A stretch of DNA of 41,055 nt, from assembly GCA_040357565.1 (NCBI GenBank), contig JBDODJ010000101.1, one strand, 5' to 3'. This document shows positions 128 through 41,055 of the stretch, piece after piece. Position 1 is the first letter of the stretch; each line of letters begins with the position of its first letter. The translations under genes were made by a program, and so were the position numbers. The notes below the pieces were generated by a model. The model ran no database searches. It was given only the letters and a program-made list of their open reading frames with translations, and was not told where the DNA came from. This DNA comes from Cercozoa sp. M6MM. Its lineage: Eukaryota; Protista; Endomyxa: Ascetosporea.

Positions 128-14349
<14,222 letters not shown>

Positions 14350-34120: not shown

Positions 34121-35651
34121 ATGCTCGGCGTAATAGCGGCTGCATTTGTGGCTTGCACATGTGCCGCACGCACGGTAAAAATCGCGGAAGGCTTTGGCCC
34201 TCGCCAGCTCGGGGGGGGGGGGGGGGGGGGGGGGGGGAACAGGTGTTTGGAGGATGCCTATGAAAAAAATTGGGTGTNNNNNNNNNNNNNNNNNNNNNNN
34301 NNNNNNNNNNNNNNNNNNNNNNNNNNNNNNNNNNNNNNNNNNNNNNNNNNNNNNNNNNNNNNNNNNNNNNNNNNNNNGGGGGGGGGGCAGTGTGAGATAT
34401 GTTGTTTGTCTGATGCGTAGAAGATCATTGGGCTGTTCCCGCTAACTGGACGTGATGGTACCTCAAGCATATGAAAGGTGCCGGTATCAGCAAAAAATGT
34501 TATTTCTTCCTTGTCACGCTAGGGAACATCGGCGAAGTACTGTTTCTCTTGAAACACAAAATCCGTTTTGTTGAACTGCTGGTACCGTTTCGGATGTGTC
34601 GGTGTGCTTGCAGAGCCGCGCATCTGGTGCTCTTCACGCACTGAACTGGCTCCGCAATGATCCAGAAAGGTGAGTTATTCTGCAACCTTGTTGTCAGTTC
34701 GGCGGACCAGGATAAGGTTCGTTTGCTGTGACAGGTTAGCAGAGGGTTTCCCAAATAACTACACCCTTCAAATTGTGGTATGCGACCATTTCTTATCTCT
34801 CAATGCATGCGATCTGTGTATCCTCTTAACTAGGACACGGCGAACTCAAAAGAAACGACACTCAATCGCGTCTACAACCACTTGCTGGATGTATGTCTGT
34901 GTGGCTCAATGTCGAACAAAAGGATCGTGATACTCTTCGTATGCACGTGTAGCCCGACGTGGCCGGTATCATTGGCGCCAGTTCTTCTGGCGTGTCCGCA
35001 GCGTACGATTTCTTTTTTCTGTCTTCTGGTATCAGCATTTTGCCTCGCTTAGTGTCTCGACGCTAAGCTCGGCCATGTCGGTCGTGCAAATCTCTTACGC
35101 CTCCACGCAAACCGACCTGTCTGTAACCTGAATTTACTGACACCTGCACACCTGTTTTCTGTGTTTCTGTCGCTTGGGTAGAGCTTTACCGATATGTTTG
35201 TGTGTAGGACAAGAGCGCATACCCCTTGTTTTGCCGTGTGGTTCCACCCAACATCCAGCAGATCCGAGCGCTACTGGGCGTGCTGACGCACTTTGGCTGG
35301 CACCGTGTCTCGGTGGTGACCACCAGCGATGGCTATGGCACTTCACTTAGCAACGACTTCCAGGTGAGTTTTCTTGCCGTGTCAAAACGATATGACAACC
35401 GAGATATGTGCTTCAGAGAGAGGTGTCGCTGGAGGAGTGGCGCGACATCTCCGTCGACGCCGTGTCCTCAATTCCTATCGTCACTGGTACTGATATCGAT
35501 ACACATGCCTCTCTCTCTCTCTTTCTCTTTCTCTCCCCTCCCTCTGGTTTGTACCAACTCTGGCTTCAGGCGAAGACAACTCGCAGCTGATCCTGGAGAC
35601 TCTCCGTCGCATTCGCGCAGCGCCTGCGCGCGTTGTTTTTTTGGTACAGTG

Positions 35652-35748
<97 letters not shown>

Positions 35749-38566
35749 AGACGGTGAAATATTGTGTTGCATTAATACGCAGGCCGCGACCGAAGTGAAT
35801 GCACGCGAAATCATGACGCAGGCAGCGCAGCTAGGTTCTCGCAGTCTGTCCTTGCTGTCTCCGTTTGAGTGTACTCACTTTGGGGAACACCATACATGCA
35901 GGCATGGCGGGCGACGATAGTGGCTGGGTCTGGATCGCCTCCGATGGCTGGTCGCAGACCTCGATCGTTGACGATTACAGCAACCTTGTACCACTGCATC
36001 AGCCCACTAGCTTTGCTGTGTGTGTGCATGTGTGTGTATGTGTGTGTGCATGTGTGTGTATGTGTGTGTGCATGTGTGTGTATGCGTGTGTGCATGTGTG
36101 TGTGTATGTGTGTGTGTGTGCATGTGTGTGTATGTATGTATGTGTGTGTATGACTCGACGTGTCTGTGTTCAGGACCTCGTCAAGGCAGCGACGGGTGTT
36201 TTGGGAGTCGCTCCGGTCAAGGTAAACATAGCCTTTGATTCGAGACCCTTTGTGGTGATGTAGTTGAGTATGGACACTGCGTTGTAGCCTCCAAACAGTA
36301 CGTTCTACCAGCACTTTGCCGACAGTTACGAGCAGAATCGCGTAGGGCTTCTCTGTGCTCTTCAGTTCTTGGCCCTGTGTTTGATTAGTGTATTTTCGGC
36401 GTGTTCGATAGACTCGACTGGAGAGCTTTCTGAATGACACCTCTGGCTGCTTTGCGGAGTCGCCGGTGTCGTGCCAAAACTTCCTGCAGGGCGACATCAA
36501 CCTGTATCTGCACTCCTTCAGGACCTCCATGCACCTACCATATCCATGCTGTTTGTGTGTGTCACTATGCAGGTACAGCTACTTTGCCTTCGACAGCACG
36601 TACACGCTGATTCGGGTATCATCATCCCAAAGTAGAGTACAGCATATCGAATGATTAACCCGCTATCGCAGGCCATCGATGCCATGCACCGCGACTCAAC
36701 TGACATTTCTACCTTGTCGTACCAATCTCCTTCTGTGTTGGCGTATACCTGTCCACTCACTTCACACACTCACGCTGTTTCTGTTTTTGCTTAGTGCGAG
36801 TGAGTTCTCGAAGCAACTAGTCGTGCCTTGTCTTTTTATATATATATATATATGTATCGGCATATGTTTCAATTATCGGTGTTGTAGGCCGAGATCAAGA
36901 ACCTCAGCTTGTCACAAAACCTGCAGTCGACGTACCCTTGATATCACGTGTAAGCACGTTTTGTTGTGTGAGTAATCTTCGTGTGGCGCAGTCAACTGCA
37001 ACCTGTGACGGGCGATCTCGTGTTTGATGACAACTGTGACCGTACTTTATGCAGTCTGTCTGTATGTACGCATGCAGGCATATGTGTTCGTGTGTGACAG
37101 GAGACCTGCCGTTCGACGTAATCAACTCGCAGTACAACGCCCAGACCAACGAAATCGAGGTCGTCGCTGTTGCTCGATGGTCCAGTAGTCACTCGCGTTC
37201 CCTTCAACGGTACTGCCTGTGTACTACGGGTGTGCGTGTGTATGTGTATGTATAACCTATCGGTCTGCTGCAGGCTGCCTGCCGACGACACGCCTGTGCC
37301 CAACGACTACCGTGAGGACGTACCTGTCACATATCAATGAGTCCAGTCACACGTACTCTGTGTACGCTTCCCGGTGTGTCACCTAGCCGAATGGAGAGTT
37401 GCGCAACTTTGTCTTTGCCGATGGCACAGAAAGTGTTCCCAAAGGTACTAACTCATCGTGTCTTTTTGTCCCATTCATGCACCACTTTAATACCTGGGCA
37501 GGCTACCTGCAGCAGCCTTGCACGGTGGACAGCATCACATGTAAGATTTACCTCTGTTTGGGACAGACAAGGCACTGGGGCACACACGTGTGCGTGTTTA
37601 TGTAGATGATCTGCACAACGACGTGTGCGGCACAAGTTCGAGCGACGGCACCTTCGACGTCTCTTTCCGCTTCGTCGGTGCGTTTAAGTCGATTCTCACA
37701 GACTGAATCTGAAACAAATAACATGCCTTGCCTATTGTGTCTCTGCTCAGATGGAGTGACCTGTGACACTGAGGCACCGGGTGCCGTGCAACTGCCTGCC
37801 ACGCGAGTACCTTACTTTGTAACAATGAGCACAGTGTGGTGACTGCGTGTTGGTGTGCAGTCGGTTCCTTGCGACAGCGTGCATCGACAGTCTTCCGCAG
37901 GTACAACACACTCGCCCGCAAACACTTTGACCGTGTGTATGTGGTTTGTGTCTGTGCTACCCAGGCATCGCTGTCCAGTCGGTCGCCGGCGTCGTTGCTA
38001 CCGTACTCCTGTGTGTCTCATCATCGGCCTCCTGACAAATGTGTTTTGTGTGCAGATGGCCGTGGTGTGCTGTGTGGCACTCTTGGTCTCGCAGCAGGTT
38101 CCGACCTGGGTGCTTCGCAATCGGTGTCCTGCCATACCCCTTTTTCCACATGTTCCTTACCTCCTTTACCCCACCCGTTGTTCGCAGCAAGAGAAGCGAT
38201 TTGACGCAGCAGCAGCAGCTCATTCTTAGTGCAGCACATTCGCCTCGCCTCAGGTACAGTGAAGACGTATGTCCATATCTACGAGGGGTTGGTTGGTACA
38301 ACTGTGCACCTCAGGAGACACGCATACCGCACTGCCATCTTTGCATTTGGTACCAGTGGAGACCTGCTTGTGTGTGTGTGTGTGTGTTGTTATAAAGACT
38401 GTTGTTGGATCTCCCTGTGTGTATTGATATATAGGCATGGGCACGCTGGTCCTGGCTCCTGTGGTGATCACTCTGAACGAACGCGAAGTGTGGCAGTGCC
38501 GAGTGTCTGCACCACTCTATACATGTACTCTCCTTTCATTCTCGACACATACACACACGCAAATGC

Positions 38567-38600
<34 letters not shown>

Positions 38601-41007
38601 CAATTTTCAATCTTAACACAGTGGCACTGTCGCTGTGTCTGGCGCCGCTGCTGCTTGCCGCCAAGACACTGGATGACAAGTACCTCCATGTGACACTACC
38701 GAGTTGTTTTGGTGTTATCTATGCGCTGTCTCTGCAGTGTGCGTCTACCTGCCGAACTGGGCGCCCTGGTTCTAGGTACACACAAACAAACACACACACA
38801 CACACACATGCTGTTTGGTGGATTATATCTTGTTCATGCAGCAACCAAGGAGCAGCGACGCAAGAGATACATCACCGTGGGCATCGTTGTCACTGTGCTG
38901 GCTGTGCTGACGTTCATCGGTGCCGTCGCTGCCTCCTGGGAGGTATGCTTTTTGTTTCCGTACACCAGTTCAGACATCTGTATTGCTGTCCTAGGTGGCG
39001 GAAGGTGATTTGGTACTGTCGTCCAACGTCAGCACTCGAGACATCGATGCCGACACTCGGCAAGAGTTCGCCCGAGGTTTCTTTGTTTGATTCAGTTTCA
39101 GAAGTGTATTGATCTGAGGACATGCGCAGTGTTCGGCGAGTCGTTCCTGTCGTTTGCTCAGTCGGTGGATGTTTTCGTGCCACGTCATCACTGCTCTGTG
39201 GTAGTGTTTCTCCATCTCTGTGCTGGAAGGGTCTTTGTACTTATGTCACTTGGCTAGTCAACGGCACATGCTTGGCTGTTCCTTGCACTTCCTGCTGTGA
39301 GGTATATCACTCAGTGTTCTTGCCTCCCTCTCGGTGTTCACTTGTGCTCCATTTGTGTGCAGTGTCGGCGTGGCTCTGCTGTGGATAGCCTACATTGCAC
39401 TGCGGTGCATGCTGTACAAGTACCACAACAAAGGTCAGAACAACGGCTCGCATTCGGCCAGCCACAACGACAACAGCAAGTACTGTTCAGGGAGAACCAC
39501 GCTGTCTATGCCTCTTGTGTCAGTGCCTCTTGTGTGTGTGCGTGTGTTATCACTGTGACTGTGCAGTTGGAGAACCACGCTGTCTATGCCGACTCGTCTG
39601 ACCATCTTCATATTGGTACACTGTGCTTTCTACATGTTACGAGTTGAGGTGAAGTCAGAAGTATATGAAATACATCGACAGCTGACGCTGATCGCCGTGA
39701 CCACCGTGCTTATCTACAGCATGAGTCGACACACCGACGCCCAAGCCCGTACTGCCAGTGTTGTCTGTGCCTTGTGGCACTGATTTGCACCTGTGGCTGT
39801 ACACAAACAGCCGGCGCTGTGGCGCGTGCCGAGGCACCTGTGCACCTGGCAGAGGTCGGCGTTTGCATCGCCGTCGCGCTGTTTGCGCTGTTGTTACTTG
39901 TGCTGCCCTTCACATGGAGGTACCATACTTTTCTGGGGTCATTGATGGTTTGTGTGTAGATGTCTGTGTGTTGCAGGACGTGTGCCAATGCCAAGGACGT
40001 GTACTATGCTCTGTACGCAAAGCACCCAGTTGGTATAAATGCACATCTAGTTGAGTCGAAGTGTACACCTTCATACTGGCCTGGTAGACTCAAAGGCGCT
40101 GGAGCGTATTGACTCGCGCAACATGCAGATGTCGGTGTCCAACACGGTATCCTCCAGCACTGCTGCTGAGGTGATTGTTTGCCACTTTTTTATTTGCTTT
40201 TGTGTCGAGCAGCACATGCTGTCGACTGCCTACACTGCGGTACTACGCAGTACCCTGTTTTTTTGTTGTTTAAAGGTTCTCAACAATGCAGAGTTTGGGC
40301 AACGTTAACGCCACCGAGAGTCTCGTTGATGAGACTAAGTAGTTTTAGCCTTCGTTTTTCTCTTGCTTGAACTTGTCGACGTTGTTCAGGCGGCGCACAT
40401 TGGCGGAACTGTCGACGGTGCTGCGTGATCCAGTCGGTAATCCTTTCCTTCTCAAACGTATATACTTTACCGTCGTGTCCAACTTTTACTCTGTGTGTGT
40501 ATGTACACAGGCTTCCACTTCTTCCTGCAGTTCGCTGCTTCACGTTACGAAAACGAAACGCCGCAGTTCTGGCGGCAAGCCAAGGTACCTCTCATTCCTG
40601 TTGACTTGCATCACCCCTGTACCACGCTATTGTGTTGTGGTGGTGTGCAGGTGCTCATGAAGCAGCTCGAAGACGCCGCTGCTGCCAGTGTAACTTGCCA
40701 TGCATACACACCTCACACAAAATGAGACATGTGATGTGCAGCCTAACATGGGAAGCGAGCGACAGGCCGTGCACGTCATGGTCGACGGTGCGCAGGTCGA
40801 AAAACTGCCGCAGAATGCGCCACTTCGATCGGCGATGTCGTTCCACATCCTGACGTCACTGGATCAGTTGGTAACCCTTCCGAAGAGTGCCTTGTTTGAC
40901 TATGAAGCATGGCGTGGATGTGTGTACAGGTGAACCGCTTTCTGGCCGACAACGCGCCTGACCAACTCAATGTGTCCGCCTCCTTGAGGTACACGAACGT
41001 GTGGATG

Positions 41008-41055
<48 letters not shown>
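34121..41055 (+). CDS. Class C GPCR-like receptor (signal peptide, Venus-flytrap domain, 4-Cys linker, 7TM) fused to a C-terminal RGS domain; 3'-partial, about 50 introns
   Basis: VFT: IIGLFPLTG, VAGIIGASSSGVS, QISYASTQTDLSDKSAYPLFCRVVP, FGWHRVSVVTTSDGYG, WVWIASDGW, YFAFDSTY, TGDLVFDDNCDR. Seven hydrophobic segments lie at 37.97-39.92 kb. RGS: LSTVLRDPVGFHFFLQFAASRYENETPQFW...VNRFLADNAPDQLNVSASLR (40.39-40.99 kb). The first exon is joined across a 100-N gap. Confidence 0.85.
34278..34377. other. 100-N scaffold gap flanked by poly-G
   Basis: Run of 100 n with G homopolymers on both sides. Confidence 0.95.

What the first reader, a model, noticed from the sequence alone, without database searches (positions are those of the whole stretch)
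34121..41055. Glutamate-receptor-like class C GPCR fused in frame to an RGS domain: a possible ligand-gated GAP
Seen: splice phases are consistent from the VFT through seven hydrophobic helices, TM7 (ALFALLLLVLPFTWR) and a short linker (..SLGNVNATESLVDETK|RRTLAE..) into an RGS fold (L.TVLRDPVG..FFLQFA...FW; NRFL..NAPDQLNVS). Known: 7TM-RGS proteins exist (Arabidopsis RGS1, fungal GprK-type, several protists), but the ones I know lack a class C Venus-flytrap ectodomain. Animal mGluR/GABA-B receptors have no fused RGS; orphan class C GPR158/GPR179 recruit RGS7 non-covalently. Inference: one polypeptide may couple extracellular amino-acid sensing directly to G-alpha inactivation, or combine on- and off-switches.
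Basis: partly seen in the sequence, partly recalled or inferred. Interest (0 to 1): 0.85.

Follow-up and report, generated by a model that had tools for sequence, protein, structure and literature searches.

The report
Flytrap receptor fused to RGS domain
A marine amoeba gene appears to encode one protein that joins an amino-acid-sensing flytrap domain and seven membrane helices to a G-protein off-switch (RGS) domain, a combination I did not find described elsewhere, but no RNA data could be checked here.

Summary
Window 34121-40989 (+) holds 52 short exons that translate exactly into a deposited protein, MES1910835.1 (hypothetical, partial; Cercozoa sp. M6MM, now Lemnamoeba sinaloensis).

- **Parts found:** a signal peptide, a Venus-flytrap domain (Pfam ANF_receptor, 187 bits), a 4-cysteine linker, seven hydrophobic helices, and the first two thirds of an RGS domain.
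- **RGS:** in the window it scores 19.9 bits, below Pfam's cut-off, because the contig ends in a (GT)n intron. The remaining RGS exons lie at the start of contig C1241. A close paralogue has the whole domain at 31.1 bits, above the cut-off.
- **Assembly gap:** it lies inside intron 1 and does not affect the fusion.
- **Membrane domain:** it looks class C only by collinear motifs and a fold match. It fails the 7tm_3 model.
- **One gene or two:** one gene is supported by the RNA-trained deposited model, by conserved coding sequence and splice sites in the linker of the paralogue, and by a third locus with the same domain order. No reads could be laid.
- **Function:** GAP activity and ligand control are inferred.
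- **Earlier notes:** the scan noted similar flytrap-membrane-RGS genes on other DNA of this genome.

I rate it a new variant of known 7TM-RGS proteins.

The parts
34121..34174 (+). Exon 1: start codon and signal peptide (P0006 residues 1-18)
   Evidence: Exact mapping of P0006. Hydrophobic N-terminus.
34175..34420 (+). Intron 1 (gtaaaa..gcgtag). It contains poly-G runs at 34211-34237 and 34378-34387 and the assembly gap at 34278-34377.
   Evidence: The paralogue has an intron at the same position.
34421..37274 (+). Venus-flytrap ligand-binding domain, about 22 exons (residues about 19-445; Pfam ANF_receptor covers residues 62-419, which map to 34757-37132)
   Evidence: Pfam: 186.8 bits on P0006; single exon 35208-35366 at E 3e-10; six-frame scan. 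PDB sequence hits to mGlu8/3/1 at E 1e-23. Pocket residues S99, A120, T122, Y170, D259 and R37 are kept.
37275..37890 (+). Linker between flytrap and membrane domain, with four cysteines (residues 486, 500, 521, 539). It is not an NCD3G nine-cysteine domain.
   Evidence: Cysteine count. No NCD3G Pfam match. Low pLDDT in the model.
37891..39983 (+). Seven-helix membrane domain. TM1 37979-38100, TM2 38334-38475, TM3 38509-38662, TM4 38871-38927, TM5 39267-39396, TM6 39598-39720, TM7 39855-39911 (spans include introns).
   Evidence: Hydropathy and coordinates. Long helices in the AF2 model. Collinear hhalign to class C 7TMs at P 0.02. No 7tm_3 Pfam hit.
39984..40312 (+). Cytoplasmic linker exons (39977-40032, 40088-40146, 40213-40239, and the start of 40292-40338) between TM7 and the RGS domain
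   Evidence: Exon map. Exon 40088-40146 is conserved with paralogue B, including synonymous changes and the same gtatcc donor.
40313..40989 (+). RGS domain, N-terminal two thirds. Exons 40292-40338, 40390-40436, 40511-40584, 40651-40689, 40742-40870 and 40930-40989, with an insertion of about 40 aa at 40684-40855.
   Evidence: Pfam RGS 19.9 bits, E 1e-3, profile 2-72. 65-95% identical to paralogue B, whose whole domain scores 31.1 bits. Atlas neighbours are RGS clusters.
40990..41055 (+). Start of the next intron (donor gt at 40989-40990), running into the (GT)n repeat that ends the contig. The gene goes on at the start of contig G000:C1241 (locus L057).
   Evidence: L057 starts with (GT)n, then an acceptor. 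Exons follow at 67-107, 167-210, 325-363, 421-472 and 529-606, which are 75-78% identical to the rest of paralogue B's RGS domain.

Best explanation
One gene of the amoeba Lemnamoeba sinaloensis (strain M6MM) encodes a single membrane protein of about 1200 residues. Its order is signal peptide, extracellular Venus-flytrap domain with an alpha-amino-acid pocket, 4-cysteine linker, seven-helix membrane domain distantly like class C GPCRs, about 55-residue cytoplasmic linker, then a divergent RGS domain with an insertion of about 40 residues.

**Shown here:**
- the domains and their order;
- the exact agreement with the deposited gene model;
- completion of the RGS domain on contig C1241;
- a close paralogue and a distant third locus with the same order;
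- many G-alpha genes in the genome.

**Inferred:**
- an amino acid closes the flytrap;
- the movement is passed through the (probably dimeric) membrane domain;
- this changes the access or activity of the tethered RGS domain towards GTP-bound G-alpha, so the receptor acts as a ligand-controlled GTPase-activating protein, as plant AtRGS1 does with glucose.
For: **Architecture**
- P0006 maps exactly to 52 exons.
- ANF_receptor scores 186.8 bits and RGS 19.9 bits at the truncated end. There are seven TM helices.

**RGS is real**
- The deposited protein of paralogue B (P0178, contig C1077) is 57% identical over the shared part and scores 31.1 bits on Pfam RGS, E 3.5e-7, profile 2-112, above the cut-off.
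- 7 of its 8 PDB sequence hits are RGS6/7/10.
- Foldseek's best hits for its AF2 model are almost all RGS domains, prob 0.94-0.99. The best VIA hit is the SNX13 RGS domain, Z 10.5.
- Gene A's missing RGS exons are found at the start of C1241.

**One gene**
- The annotation pipeline used transcriptome reads.
- The model contains a 14-nt exon and other micro-exons.
- In B, the exon before the RGS exons opens at a canonical acceptor. Its 10 codons upstream of the only available Met are conserved with A: 5 identical, 3 synonymous and 2 non-synonymous.
- B has no other Met before the RGS domain.
- A and B share the gtatcc and gtaa(t/c)c donors at the same places.
- A third, unrelated-looking locus on C1 has flytrap pieces, a 424-aa membrane ORF and a 45-bit RGS within 4 kb on one strand.
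- The membrane part alone has 7TM-RGS clusters as its nearest Atlas neighbours; this is only a lead.

**Substrate and pocket**
- There are at least 15 G-alpha loci.
- The residue matching RGS4 Asn128 (LNVS / INVA) is kept.
- The amino-acid backbone contacts of mGlu3 are kept.
Against: - The junctions between TM7 and the RGS exons therefore rest on a gene model.
- The genome is very compact, with a median intergenic distance of 162 bp. A separate downstream RGS gene is not excluded by distance.
- A spliceable open path exists in 55% of shuffles.
- Paralogue B's TM7 lies in a contig break, so B does not show the junction itself.
- The deposited B model starts at a Met inside the linker exon and is not flagged partial.
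- The RGS differs from canonical ones. The residue matching RGS4 Asn88 is Thr in the ungapped alignment. There is an insertion of about 40 aa, and R167 may be Glu. GAP activity is therefore uncertain.
- The membrane domain fails the 7tm_3 model.
Confidence: 0.6

Rival explanations
1. The fusion is real, but the protein is a working GPCR (an exchange factor for G-alpha when ligand-bound) that carries its own RGS domain. Occupied receptors would switch G-alpha on and unoccupied ones switch it off. That gives fast shut-off or a response that follows the fraction of receptors occupied. Alternatively, the RGS is a non-catalytic G-alpha anchor.
For: - The membrane domain lines up along its whole length with class C 7TMs. 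The ICL1 motif, the TM3 cysteine, the AK motif after TM3, the ND-S motif before TM6 and the proline motif in TM7 all fall in place.
- Full-length mGlu and CaSR structures are the best fold matches.
- The altered Asn88-equivalent and the insertion could fit a binding-only RGS.
- Receptor-associated RGS proteins are known: GPR158 with RGS7 (PMC8611064), and yeast Ste2 with Sst2 (PMC5199120; the mechanism there is from my memory).
Against: - No significant 7tm_3 match.
- The intracellular loops are much longer than in class C receptors.
- Known covalent 7TM-RGS proteins that have been studied act as GAPs (AtRGS1, PMC3718340; fungal class VI, PMC10794492).
- Nothing here tests exchange activity.
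Confidence: 0.22
2. There are two genes: a flytrap-7TM receptor ending shortly after TM7, and a separate small RGS gene that starts at a Met in the linker exon (around 40120-40130) or at 40286. The annotation pipeline merged them because they are so close.
For: - The median intergenic distance is only 162 bp.
- Open spliceable paths arise by chance in 164 of 300 shuffles.
- The deposited model for the paralogue's RGS part is a stand-alone 262-aa protein starting at that Met.
- Gene A has Met codons at the same place and at 40286.
- No RNA evidence was seen here.
Against: - The codons upstream of that Met are conserved as protein between A and B, with synonymous changes. In B they begin at a canonical acceptor right after a repeat-broken intron, so the exon is internal.
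- The supposed start lies in the same frame and same exon as the receptor's tail, so the two 'genes' would share one open frame.
- B has no other Met before the RGS domain.
- The B model's start is explained by the contig break 55 nt upstream.
- A third locus shows the same order.
- The pipeline used transcript data with a setting (jaccard_clip) which, from my own knowledge of Trinity, is meant to cut falsely fused transcripts; the paper only states that it was used.
Confidence: 0.13
3. The RGS call is wrong: the C-terminal exons encode an unrelated helical tail.
For: - The window's own match is below Pfam's cut-off (19.9 against 23.9 bits), and a spurious DUF2417 hit has a similar E-value.
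- Exon-by-exon Pfam scans found nothing.
- Generic helical bundles score nearly as high as RGS in the VIA search.
Against: - The paralogue's complete domain passes the cut-off.
- RGS is the only family hit, found three times independently.
- PDB sequence and fold hits are RGS.
- The rest of the domain is found on C1241.
Confidence: 0.03

Closest known systems
Plant AtRGS1 and other 7TM-RGS proteins of protists, chytrids, filastereans and ichthyosporeans
   Same: Seven membrane helices followed by a cytoplasmic linker and a C-terminal RGS box in one polypeptide. In Arabidopsis the protein is a GAP for a self-activating G-alpha, and an extracellular signal (glucose) relieves it (PMC3718340, PMC3386157). 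The architecture is widespread outside animals (PMC3971589).
   Different: Those proteins have no large ligand-binding ectodomain. Here a 430-residue Venus-flytrap domain with an amino-acid pocket sits in front. No sequence similarity to AtRGS1 was tested or seen. The RGS has an insertion of about 40 aa.
Class C GPCRs (mGluR, CaSR, GABA-B, taste T1R)
   Same: - The flytrap domain is most similar to mGlu3/8 (27% identity; PDB hits at E 1e-23).
- It keeps the Ser, Ala/Thr, Tyr and Asp contacts for the alpha-amino-acid moiety.
- A cysteine-containing linker and 7TM follow.
- The best fold matches are full-length mGlu and CaSR.
   Different: - No NCD3G domain (4 cysteines instead of 9).
- The membrane domain fails 7tm_3 (Pfam and a local 40-sequence model).
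- The intracellular loops are long.
- The distal glutamate contacts (R68, K389 of mGlu3) are Ala and Tyr.
- Animal class C receptors have no fused RGS.
GPR158 / GPR179 with RGS7-Gbeta5
   Same: A class C family receptor that brings an RGS protein to the membrane to end G-alpha signalling (PMC8611064).
   Different: The RGS is a separate protein bound non-covalently, and GPR158 lacks a flytrap domain. Here the RGS is part of the chain and a flytrap is present.
Fungal class VI GPCRs (GprK type), and database clusters of 7TM(7tm_3-like)-RGS proteins from Zoopagomycota, Chytridiomycota and Oomycota
   Same: 7TM plus C-terminal RGS, with GAP activity reported for Aspergillus oryzae GprK (PMC10794492). 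Atlas clusters of 420-550 aa carrying RGS, one also carrying 7tm_3, are the nearest neighbours of this protein's membrane part (a lead only, score 0.85).
   Different: These proteins are too short to carry a flytrap domain. Kinship of the membrane domains is not shown by any alignment statistic here.

Membership tests
Class C (glutamate-family) GPCR | Extracellular Venus-flytrap (ANF_receptor / periplasmic-binding-protein type 1) domain | tested here: met
   PF01094 at 186.8 bits, residues 62-419 of P0006. Exon alone at E 3e-10. mGlu8/3/1 PDB hits at E 1e-23.
Class C (glutamate-family) GPCR | Nine-cysteine domain (NCD3G) between flytrap and membrane (absent in GABA-B) | tested here: not met
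   No PF07562 match in P0006, while relatives P0080 and P0093 show it. Only 4 cysteines in residues 446-545.
Class C (glutamate-family) GPCR | Seven-helix domain matching the 7tm_3 model | tested here: not met
   - No PF00003 hit in the window's six frames, in the exons, or in P0006 at E up to 0.1.
- A local HMM of 40 class C 7TMs scored -3.7 bits.
- Only a weak collinear hhalign (P 0.02) and fold matches. The fold model was built with class C rows in its alignment.
Class C (glutamate-family) GPCR | Alpha-amino-acid contact residues in the flytrap cleft (mGlu3 S151, A172, T174, Y222, D301; numbering from memory) | tested here: met
   S99, A120, T122, Y170 and D259 align with them, and R37 aligns with R64. 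The distal R68 and K389 are A41 and Y339.
RGS domain (PF00615) | Match to the family model above the curated cut-off (23.9 bits) | tested here: inconclusive
   - Window part alone: 19.9 bits, E 1e-3, profile 2-72 only, cut by the contig end.
- Close paralogue's full domain: 31.1 bits, profile 2-112, above the cut-off.
- The joined protein of C101 plus C1241 exons was not scanned.
RGS domain (PF00615) | Nine-helix RGS fold | tested here: inconclusive
   AF2 model of paralogue P0178: mean pLDDT 72, core above 90. Foldseek's top hits are RGS1/4/8/16/18 at prob 0.94-0.99, but E is only 0.035-0.3 and TM 0.41-0.58. VIA's best is the SNX13 RGS at Z 10.5, not far above generic helical bundles.
RGS domain (PF00615) | G-alpha contact residues needed for GAP action (RGS4 Glu87, Asn88, Asn128, Asp163, Ser164, Arg167; from memory) | tested here: inconclusive
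   - The Asn128 equivalent is kept (LNVS in A, INVA in B).
- An EN pair is present, but with two extra residues before FW. In the ungapped alignment Asn88 falls on Thr.
- The C-terminal NSWREF / ASWREF replaces DSYRRF.
7TM-RGS receptor-GAPs (AtRGS1 type) | Seven membrane helices and an RGS box in one polypeptide, with the RGS on the cytoplasmic C-terminal side | tested here: met
   - The deposited model P0006 contains both.
- A signal peptide plus an odd helix count puts the C-terminus in the cytoplasm.
- The single-transcript status rests on the annotation and on paralogue conservation, not on reads seen here.
7TM-RGS receptor-GAPs (AtRGS1 type) | GAP activity on a cognate G-alpha, modulated by an extracellular signal | not testable with these tools
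   Only the presence of at least 15 G-alpha loci in the genome was shown.

The most novel reading that the evidence does not exclude
Lemnamoeba carries a small family of receptors in which an amino-acid-binding flytrap directly controls a covalently attached RGS domain. The family has at least two close members plus a distant flytrap-sushi-membrane-RGS locus. These would be true ligand-gated GTPase-activating receptors, or push-pull sensors that are exchange factor when occupied and GAP when empty. That is a wiring of heterotrimeric G-protein signalling not described for any class C-type receptor. It would give a natural model for how flytrap closure is passed across a membrane to an enzyme-like cytoplasmic domain.
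Probability: 0.45. Interest if true: 0.75.

Novelty: new variant of a known kind. Interest (0 to 1): 0.58.

Why it matters
7TM-RGS proteins are the main known alternative to the animal way of wiring G-protein signalling, because the receptor switches the G protein off rather than on. For the best-studied case, AtRGS1, a directly bound ligand has not been firmly established (my recollection of the field).

A 7TM-RGS protein with a well-understood ligand-binding module would help here. The flytrap domain has a recognisable amino-acid pocket, so ligand control of a receptor-GAP becomes directly testable. One could express the ectodomain, find the amino acid, and measure GAP activity with and without it.

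The finding also shows that flytrap domains have been joined to G-protein regulators outside animals in a new way. It adds to evidence that Rhizaria expanded G-alpha, RGS and class C receptor families independently.

The gene is at present an unnamed 'hypothetical protein, partial' split over two draft contigs.

Tried and rejected
**Searches that gave nothing or little**
- Six-frame Pfam scans of the genome for RGS and 7tm_3 gave no hit in this contig. Exon-by-exon Pfam scans of the RGS and TM exons gave nothing, because the exons are too short.
- A local RGS model built from 10 own-genome paralogues ranked the two RGS pieces 2nd and 7th of 1520 six-frame pieces, but at E 5-12, which is not significant.
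- The word-index search with the TM+RGS part found only the protein itself. Its length window excludes the roughly 470-aa 7TM-RGS proteins.
- The whole-protein search found only ordinary class C receptors and a triple-flytrap protein, none with RGS.

**My own gene finding**
- A home-made codon-usage and splice DP gene finder read through introns, so I dropped it.
- My hand reading of an 'HIRLAS' exon was wrong. The deposited frame (SAAHSPRL) is the one conserved in the paralogue.

**Leads rejected**
- Contig C184 as the gene's continuation: it holds its own complete RGS gene.
- The C1 locus as a close paralogue: tblastn found no similarity. It is only an architectural parallel.

**Controls**
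- Frame consistency as proof of one gene: 164 of 300 shuffles also give a valid path.

I redid it with coordinates only.
- Two papers were not held: Anantharaman 2011 and Bradford 2013.
- Complex prediction was not used. No complete G-alpha chain is available by a single reference, and the window's RGS is truncated.

- I did not search any spliced model of my own. All whole-protein work used the deposited proteins P0006 and P0178.
- The C101 and C1241 exons were not joined for a scan.
Full report
**What is there.** The region is a very intron-rich gene on the + strand of a eukaryotic contig. The window is the whole contig G000:C101 of a 23.6-Mb draft genome.

A search of 1.8 billion protein representatives with the longest flytrap exon (window:35208-35366) returned a 1072-residue protein, P0006, 100% identical. 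It is NCBI MES1910835.1, 'MAG: hypothetical protein MHM6MM_003363, partial [Cercozoa sp. M6MM]'. I mapped P0006 back on the window letter for letter. It uses 52 exons (14-156 nt, median 56) from 34121 to 40989. There are 51 GT-AG introns (median 64 nt), nearly all with GTA-type donors.

**Organism.** M6MM is a marine amoeba from fish gills, placed in Apofilosa (Rhizaria). Its draft genome (23.67 Mb, 2244 scaffolds) was annotated with funannotate train/predict/update using transcriptome reads (PMC11069148). It has since been named Lemnamoeba sinaloensis and assembled to chromosome level. That assembly has 13 introns per gene, mean intron length 82 bp and median intergenic distance 162 bp. Simple-sequence repeats broke the draft contigs (PMC13746701).

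**The assembly gap.** The N run at 34278-34377 lies inside intron 1 (34175-34420). On one side is the signal-peptide exon, which ends in phase 0. On the other is exon 2, which begins KIIGLFPLTGRD. The gap is flanked by poly-G runs of 27 and 10 bases. The paralogue has an intron at the same position. Only the assignment of the signal-peptide exon depends on the gap. The fusion claim does not.

**Domains.**
- *Flytrap.* Pfam on P0006 gives ANF_receptor at 186.8 bits, residues 62-419. Solved mGlu8/3/1 and CaSR ectodomains match at E 1e-23 to 1e-18. Aligned with mGlu3 relatives, the residues that hold the alpha-amino-acid moiety are kept: S99, A120, T122, Y170 and D259, plus R37. The two basic residues that hold glutamate's distal carboxylate are Ala and Tyr (mGlu3 numbering is from memory and fits the retrieved sequence). 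The likely ligand is an amino acid, not necessarily glutamate.
- *Linker.* It has four cysteines and no NCD3G match.
- *Membrane domain.* Hydropathy gives exactly seven helices after the signal peptide.

**Is the membrane domain class C?** Not by the family model.
- There is no 7tm_3 hit in the six-frame genome scan, in the exons, or in P0006.
- A local model built from 40 class C 7TM domains scores -3.7 bits.
- A permissive hhalign run gives a collinear alignment over all seven helices at P 0.02. The usual landmarks fall in register: ICL1 SAAHSPRL against KATSREL, the cysteine at the top of TM3, AAKT after TM3, ND-S before TM6, and LPFTW against VPKCW in TM7.
- An AF2 model (mean pLDDT 68; flytrap above 90; helices 60-83) has full-length mGlu2/3/4/8 and CaSR as best Foldseek hits. 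These span 900-1000 aligned columns and rank ahead of ectodomain-only chains. The model's alignment contained class C sequences, so this is not independent.
- The membrane part alone has clusters of 420-550-aa proteins carrying RGS as nearest neighbours in the ESM Atlas. These come from Zoopagomycota, Oomycota and Chytridiomycota, and one cluster also carries 7tm_3. The score is 0.85, which is only a lead.

I therefore call the domain class-C-like, with membership not met.

**Is the RGS real?**
- In the window it scores 19.9 bits (E 1e-3), below the 23.9-bit cut-off. It covers profile positions 2-72 and ends at the last residue before the contig ends.
- Searching the genome with P0006 found a close paralogue, 'B', broken over three small contigs. 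C122 holds the flytrap N-half (P0017). C1212 holds the flytrap C-half to TM6. C1077 holds the linker and RGS. B is collinear with A over residues 33-802 and 916-1072, and 65-95% identical in the RGS N-half.
- The deposited protein of C1077, P0178 (262 aa), scores 31.1 bits on Pfam RGS (E 3.5e-7, profile 2-112), above the cut-off.
- 7 of its 8 PDB sequence hits are RGS6/7/10.
- Foldseek's best hits for its AF2 model (pLDDT 72, core above 90) are almost all RGS domains at prob 0.94-0.99, though with weak E-values.
- An all-against-all structural search puts the SNX13 RGS domain first at Z 10.5, only a little above generic helical bundles.
- Searching the genome with P0178 then found the missing end of gene A at the start of contig C1241. 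That contig begins with (GT)n, just as the window ends with (GT)n. An acceptor follows, then five exons that are 75-78% identical to the rest of B's RGS domain and tail. The split codon AG|G gives the same Arg as in B.

The RGS domain of the window's gene is therefore complete in the genome. The draft assembly cuts it at a microsatellite inside an intron.

**How the RGS differs from canonical ones.** It has an insertion of about 40 residues after the FW helix. It has two extra residues between the EN pair and FW, so the Asn88 equivalent of RGS4 is Thr in the ungapped alignment. It has NSWREF / ASWREF where RGS4 has DSYRRF. The Asn128 equivalent is kept (RGS4 numbering is from memory).

- *Frame consistency is weak evidence.* 164 of 300 dinucleotide shuffles of the 470 nt between TM7 and the first RGS exon also allow an open GT-AG path. 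Genes here lie a median of 162 bp apart.
- *The linker exon is coding upstream of the supposed start.* Exon 40088-40146 (..SKALERIDSRNMQMSVSNT) is conserved in B (NLLERIDRRNAQMSMAPS..). In the ten codons upstream of the shared Met, five are identical, three differ synonymously and two change the residue.
- *B's linker exon is internal.* It opens directly after a canonical acceptor (tgcatgcag|), 55 nt from a TA repeat that ends the contig. A and B use the same gtatcc donor after this exon.
- *B has no other start.* There is no other Met between that exon and the RGS domain. The RGS can only be translated as a continuation of this exon, which is itself a continuation of something upstream. In A that is the TM7 tail.
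- *The stand-alone start of P0178 is best explained by the contig break.*
- *A third locus has the same order.* On contig C1, one strand carries three collinear ANF_receptor pieces, a sushi-like module, a 424-aa multi-helix ORF and a canonical RGS ORF (45.4 bits) within 4 kb. Frame-keeping introns are available between them. It shows no sequence similarity to gene A outside the domains.
- *The deposited model points to transcript evidence.* It includes a 14-nt exon and several exons under 30 nt. To me this suggests transcript support from the RNA-trained pipeline, but that is an inference.

I put the single-gene reading at about 0.85.

**Mechanism.**
- *Shown:* a secreted-side amino-acid-type flytrap, seven helices, a cytoplasmic RGS, and a genome with at least 15 G-alpha loci, about 25 RGS loci and several ordinary flytrap-7tm_3 receptors.
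- *Inferred:* ligand closure of the flytrap changes what the tethered RGS does to GTP-bound G-alpha. This would resemble AtRGS1, where glucose uncouples the GAP from a self-activating G-alpha (PMC3718340), and fungal class VI receptors, which act through GAP activity (PMC10794492).
- *Main rival:* a working receptor that also carries its own off-switch (push-pull or ratiometric sensing), or a non-catalytic RGS anchor. The altered contact residues keep this open.

**Comparison with what is known.** 7TM-RGS proteins are widespread outside animals (PMC3971589). Class C receptors with flytraps are ancient. GPR158 recruits RGS7 non-covalently and lacks a flytrap (PMC8611064).

I found no paper describing flytrap plus 7TM plus RGS. 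None of the 149 other flytrap relatives from the library search, nor the 27 relatives with precomputed Pfam domains, carries RGS. These searches were limited, and two key surveys were not readable. I cannot exclude that the architecture is listed in domain databases.

First-stage notes of this scan describe similar flytrap-membrane-RGS genes on other pieces of this same genome. These fit the loci I examined independently.

**Limits.**
- The joined step was left out.

**Verdict.** The finding is a new variant of the 7TM-RGS receptor-GAP kind, carried by an unnamed, fragmentary database entry. Transcript proof and function remain open.

Noticed in passing
window 41010-41055 and L057 (G000:C1241) 1-38: The contig ends in (GT)n and C1241 begins with (GT)n. 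The break falls inside an intron of this gene, so two draft contigs can be ordered and oriented through it. Other introns of the gene also hold long GT repeats (35644-35782, 35988-36173).
   Followed up: yes
window 34523-34536: A 14-nt micro-exon (encoding GNIGE with a split codon) lies between 65-nt and 77-nt introns. The gene has 52 exons in 6.9 kb, far above the genome's reported mean of 13 introns per gene.
   Followed up: partly
window 34211-34237 and 34378-34387: Poly-G runs of 27 and 10 bases flank the 100-N assembly gap. The gap is probably a homopolymer that the short reads could not cross.
   Followed up: no
window 39491-39512 and 39569-39590: A perfect 22-nt copy of the start of exon 39567-39615 (with its last intron bases) lies inside the preceding intron. 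It offers a decoy acceptor context.
   Followed up: no
L050 (G000:C1077) 1365-1502, minus strand: About 1.5 kb downstream of paralogue B's RGS end, on the same strand, another flytrap-type coding piece begins (..FSDKSTYPFFNR..). This suggests receptors of this kind lie in tandem.
   Followed up: no
L050 about 2965-3061 (minus strand) and L057 655-733: The deposited model P0178 seems to end wrongly. Its last ~27 residues (IPIYKLIYFFFLY...) read into an intron. A further exon (RRLLWRG..MRS..DVA.D) is conserved between B and gene A downstream of the RGS domain.
   Followed up: partly
L031 (G000:C1:449000-458900), minus strand 7319-3355: A third locus carries flytrap pieces, a sushi-like stretch (5628-5395), a 424-aa membrane ORF with a long acidic loop, and a canonical RGS ORF. 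The ORF holding the RGS N-terminal helix and the main RGS ORF overlap out of frame (3774-3741) with no room for an intron. This may be a 1-nt assembly error.
   Followed up: partly
P0001-P0005 and P0151 (database proteins): The closest library matches to the flytrap exon include giant proteins of 1400-3900 residues with 3 to 10 flytrap-like repeats and no RGS. Their origin is unknown (one comes from a Logan assembly).
   Followed up: no
window 35814-36578, minus strand: A 255-codon open frame on the opposite strand is only the translation of the GT/AC microsatellites and the flanking intron. It is not a gene.
   Followed up: partly
G000 genome-wide: For a 24-Mb genome the G-protein toolkit is large: at least 15 G-alpha loci, about 25 RGS loci and some 8 ordinary flytrap-7tm_3 receptors.
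   Followed up: partly
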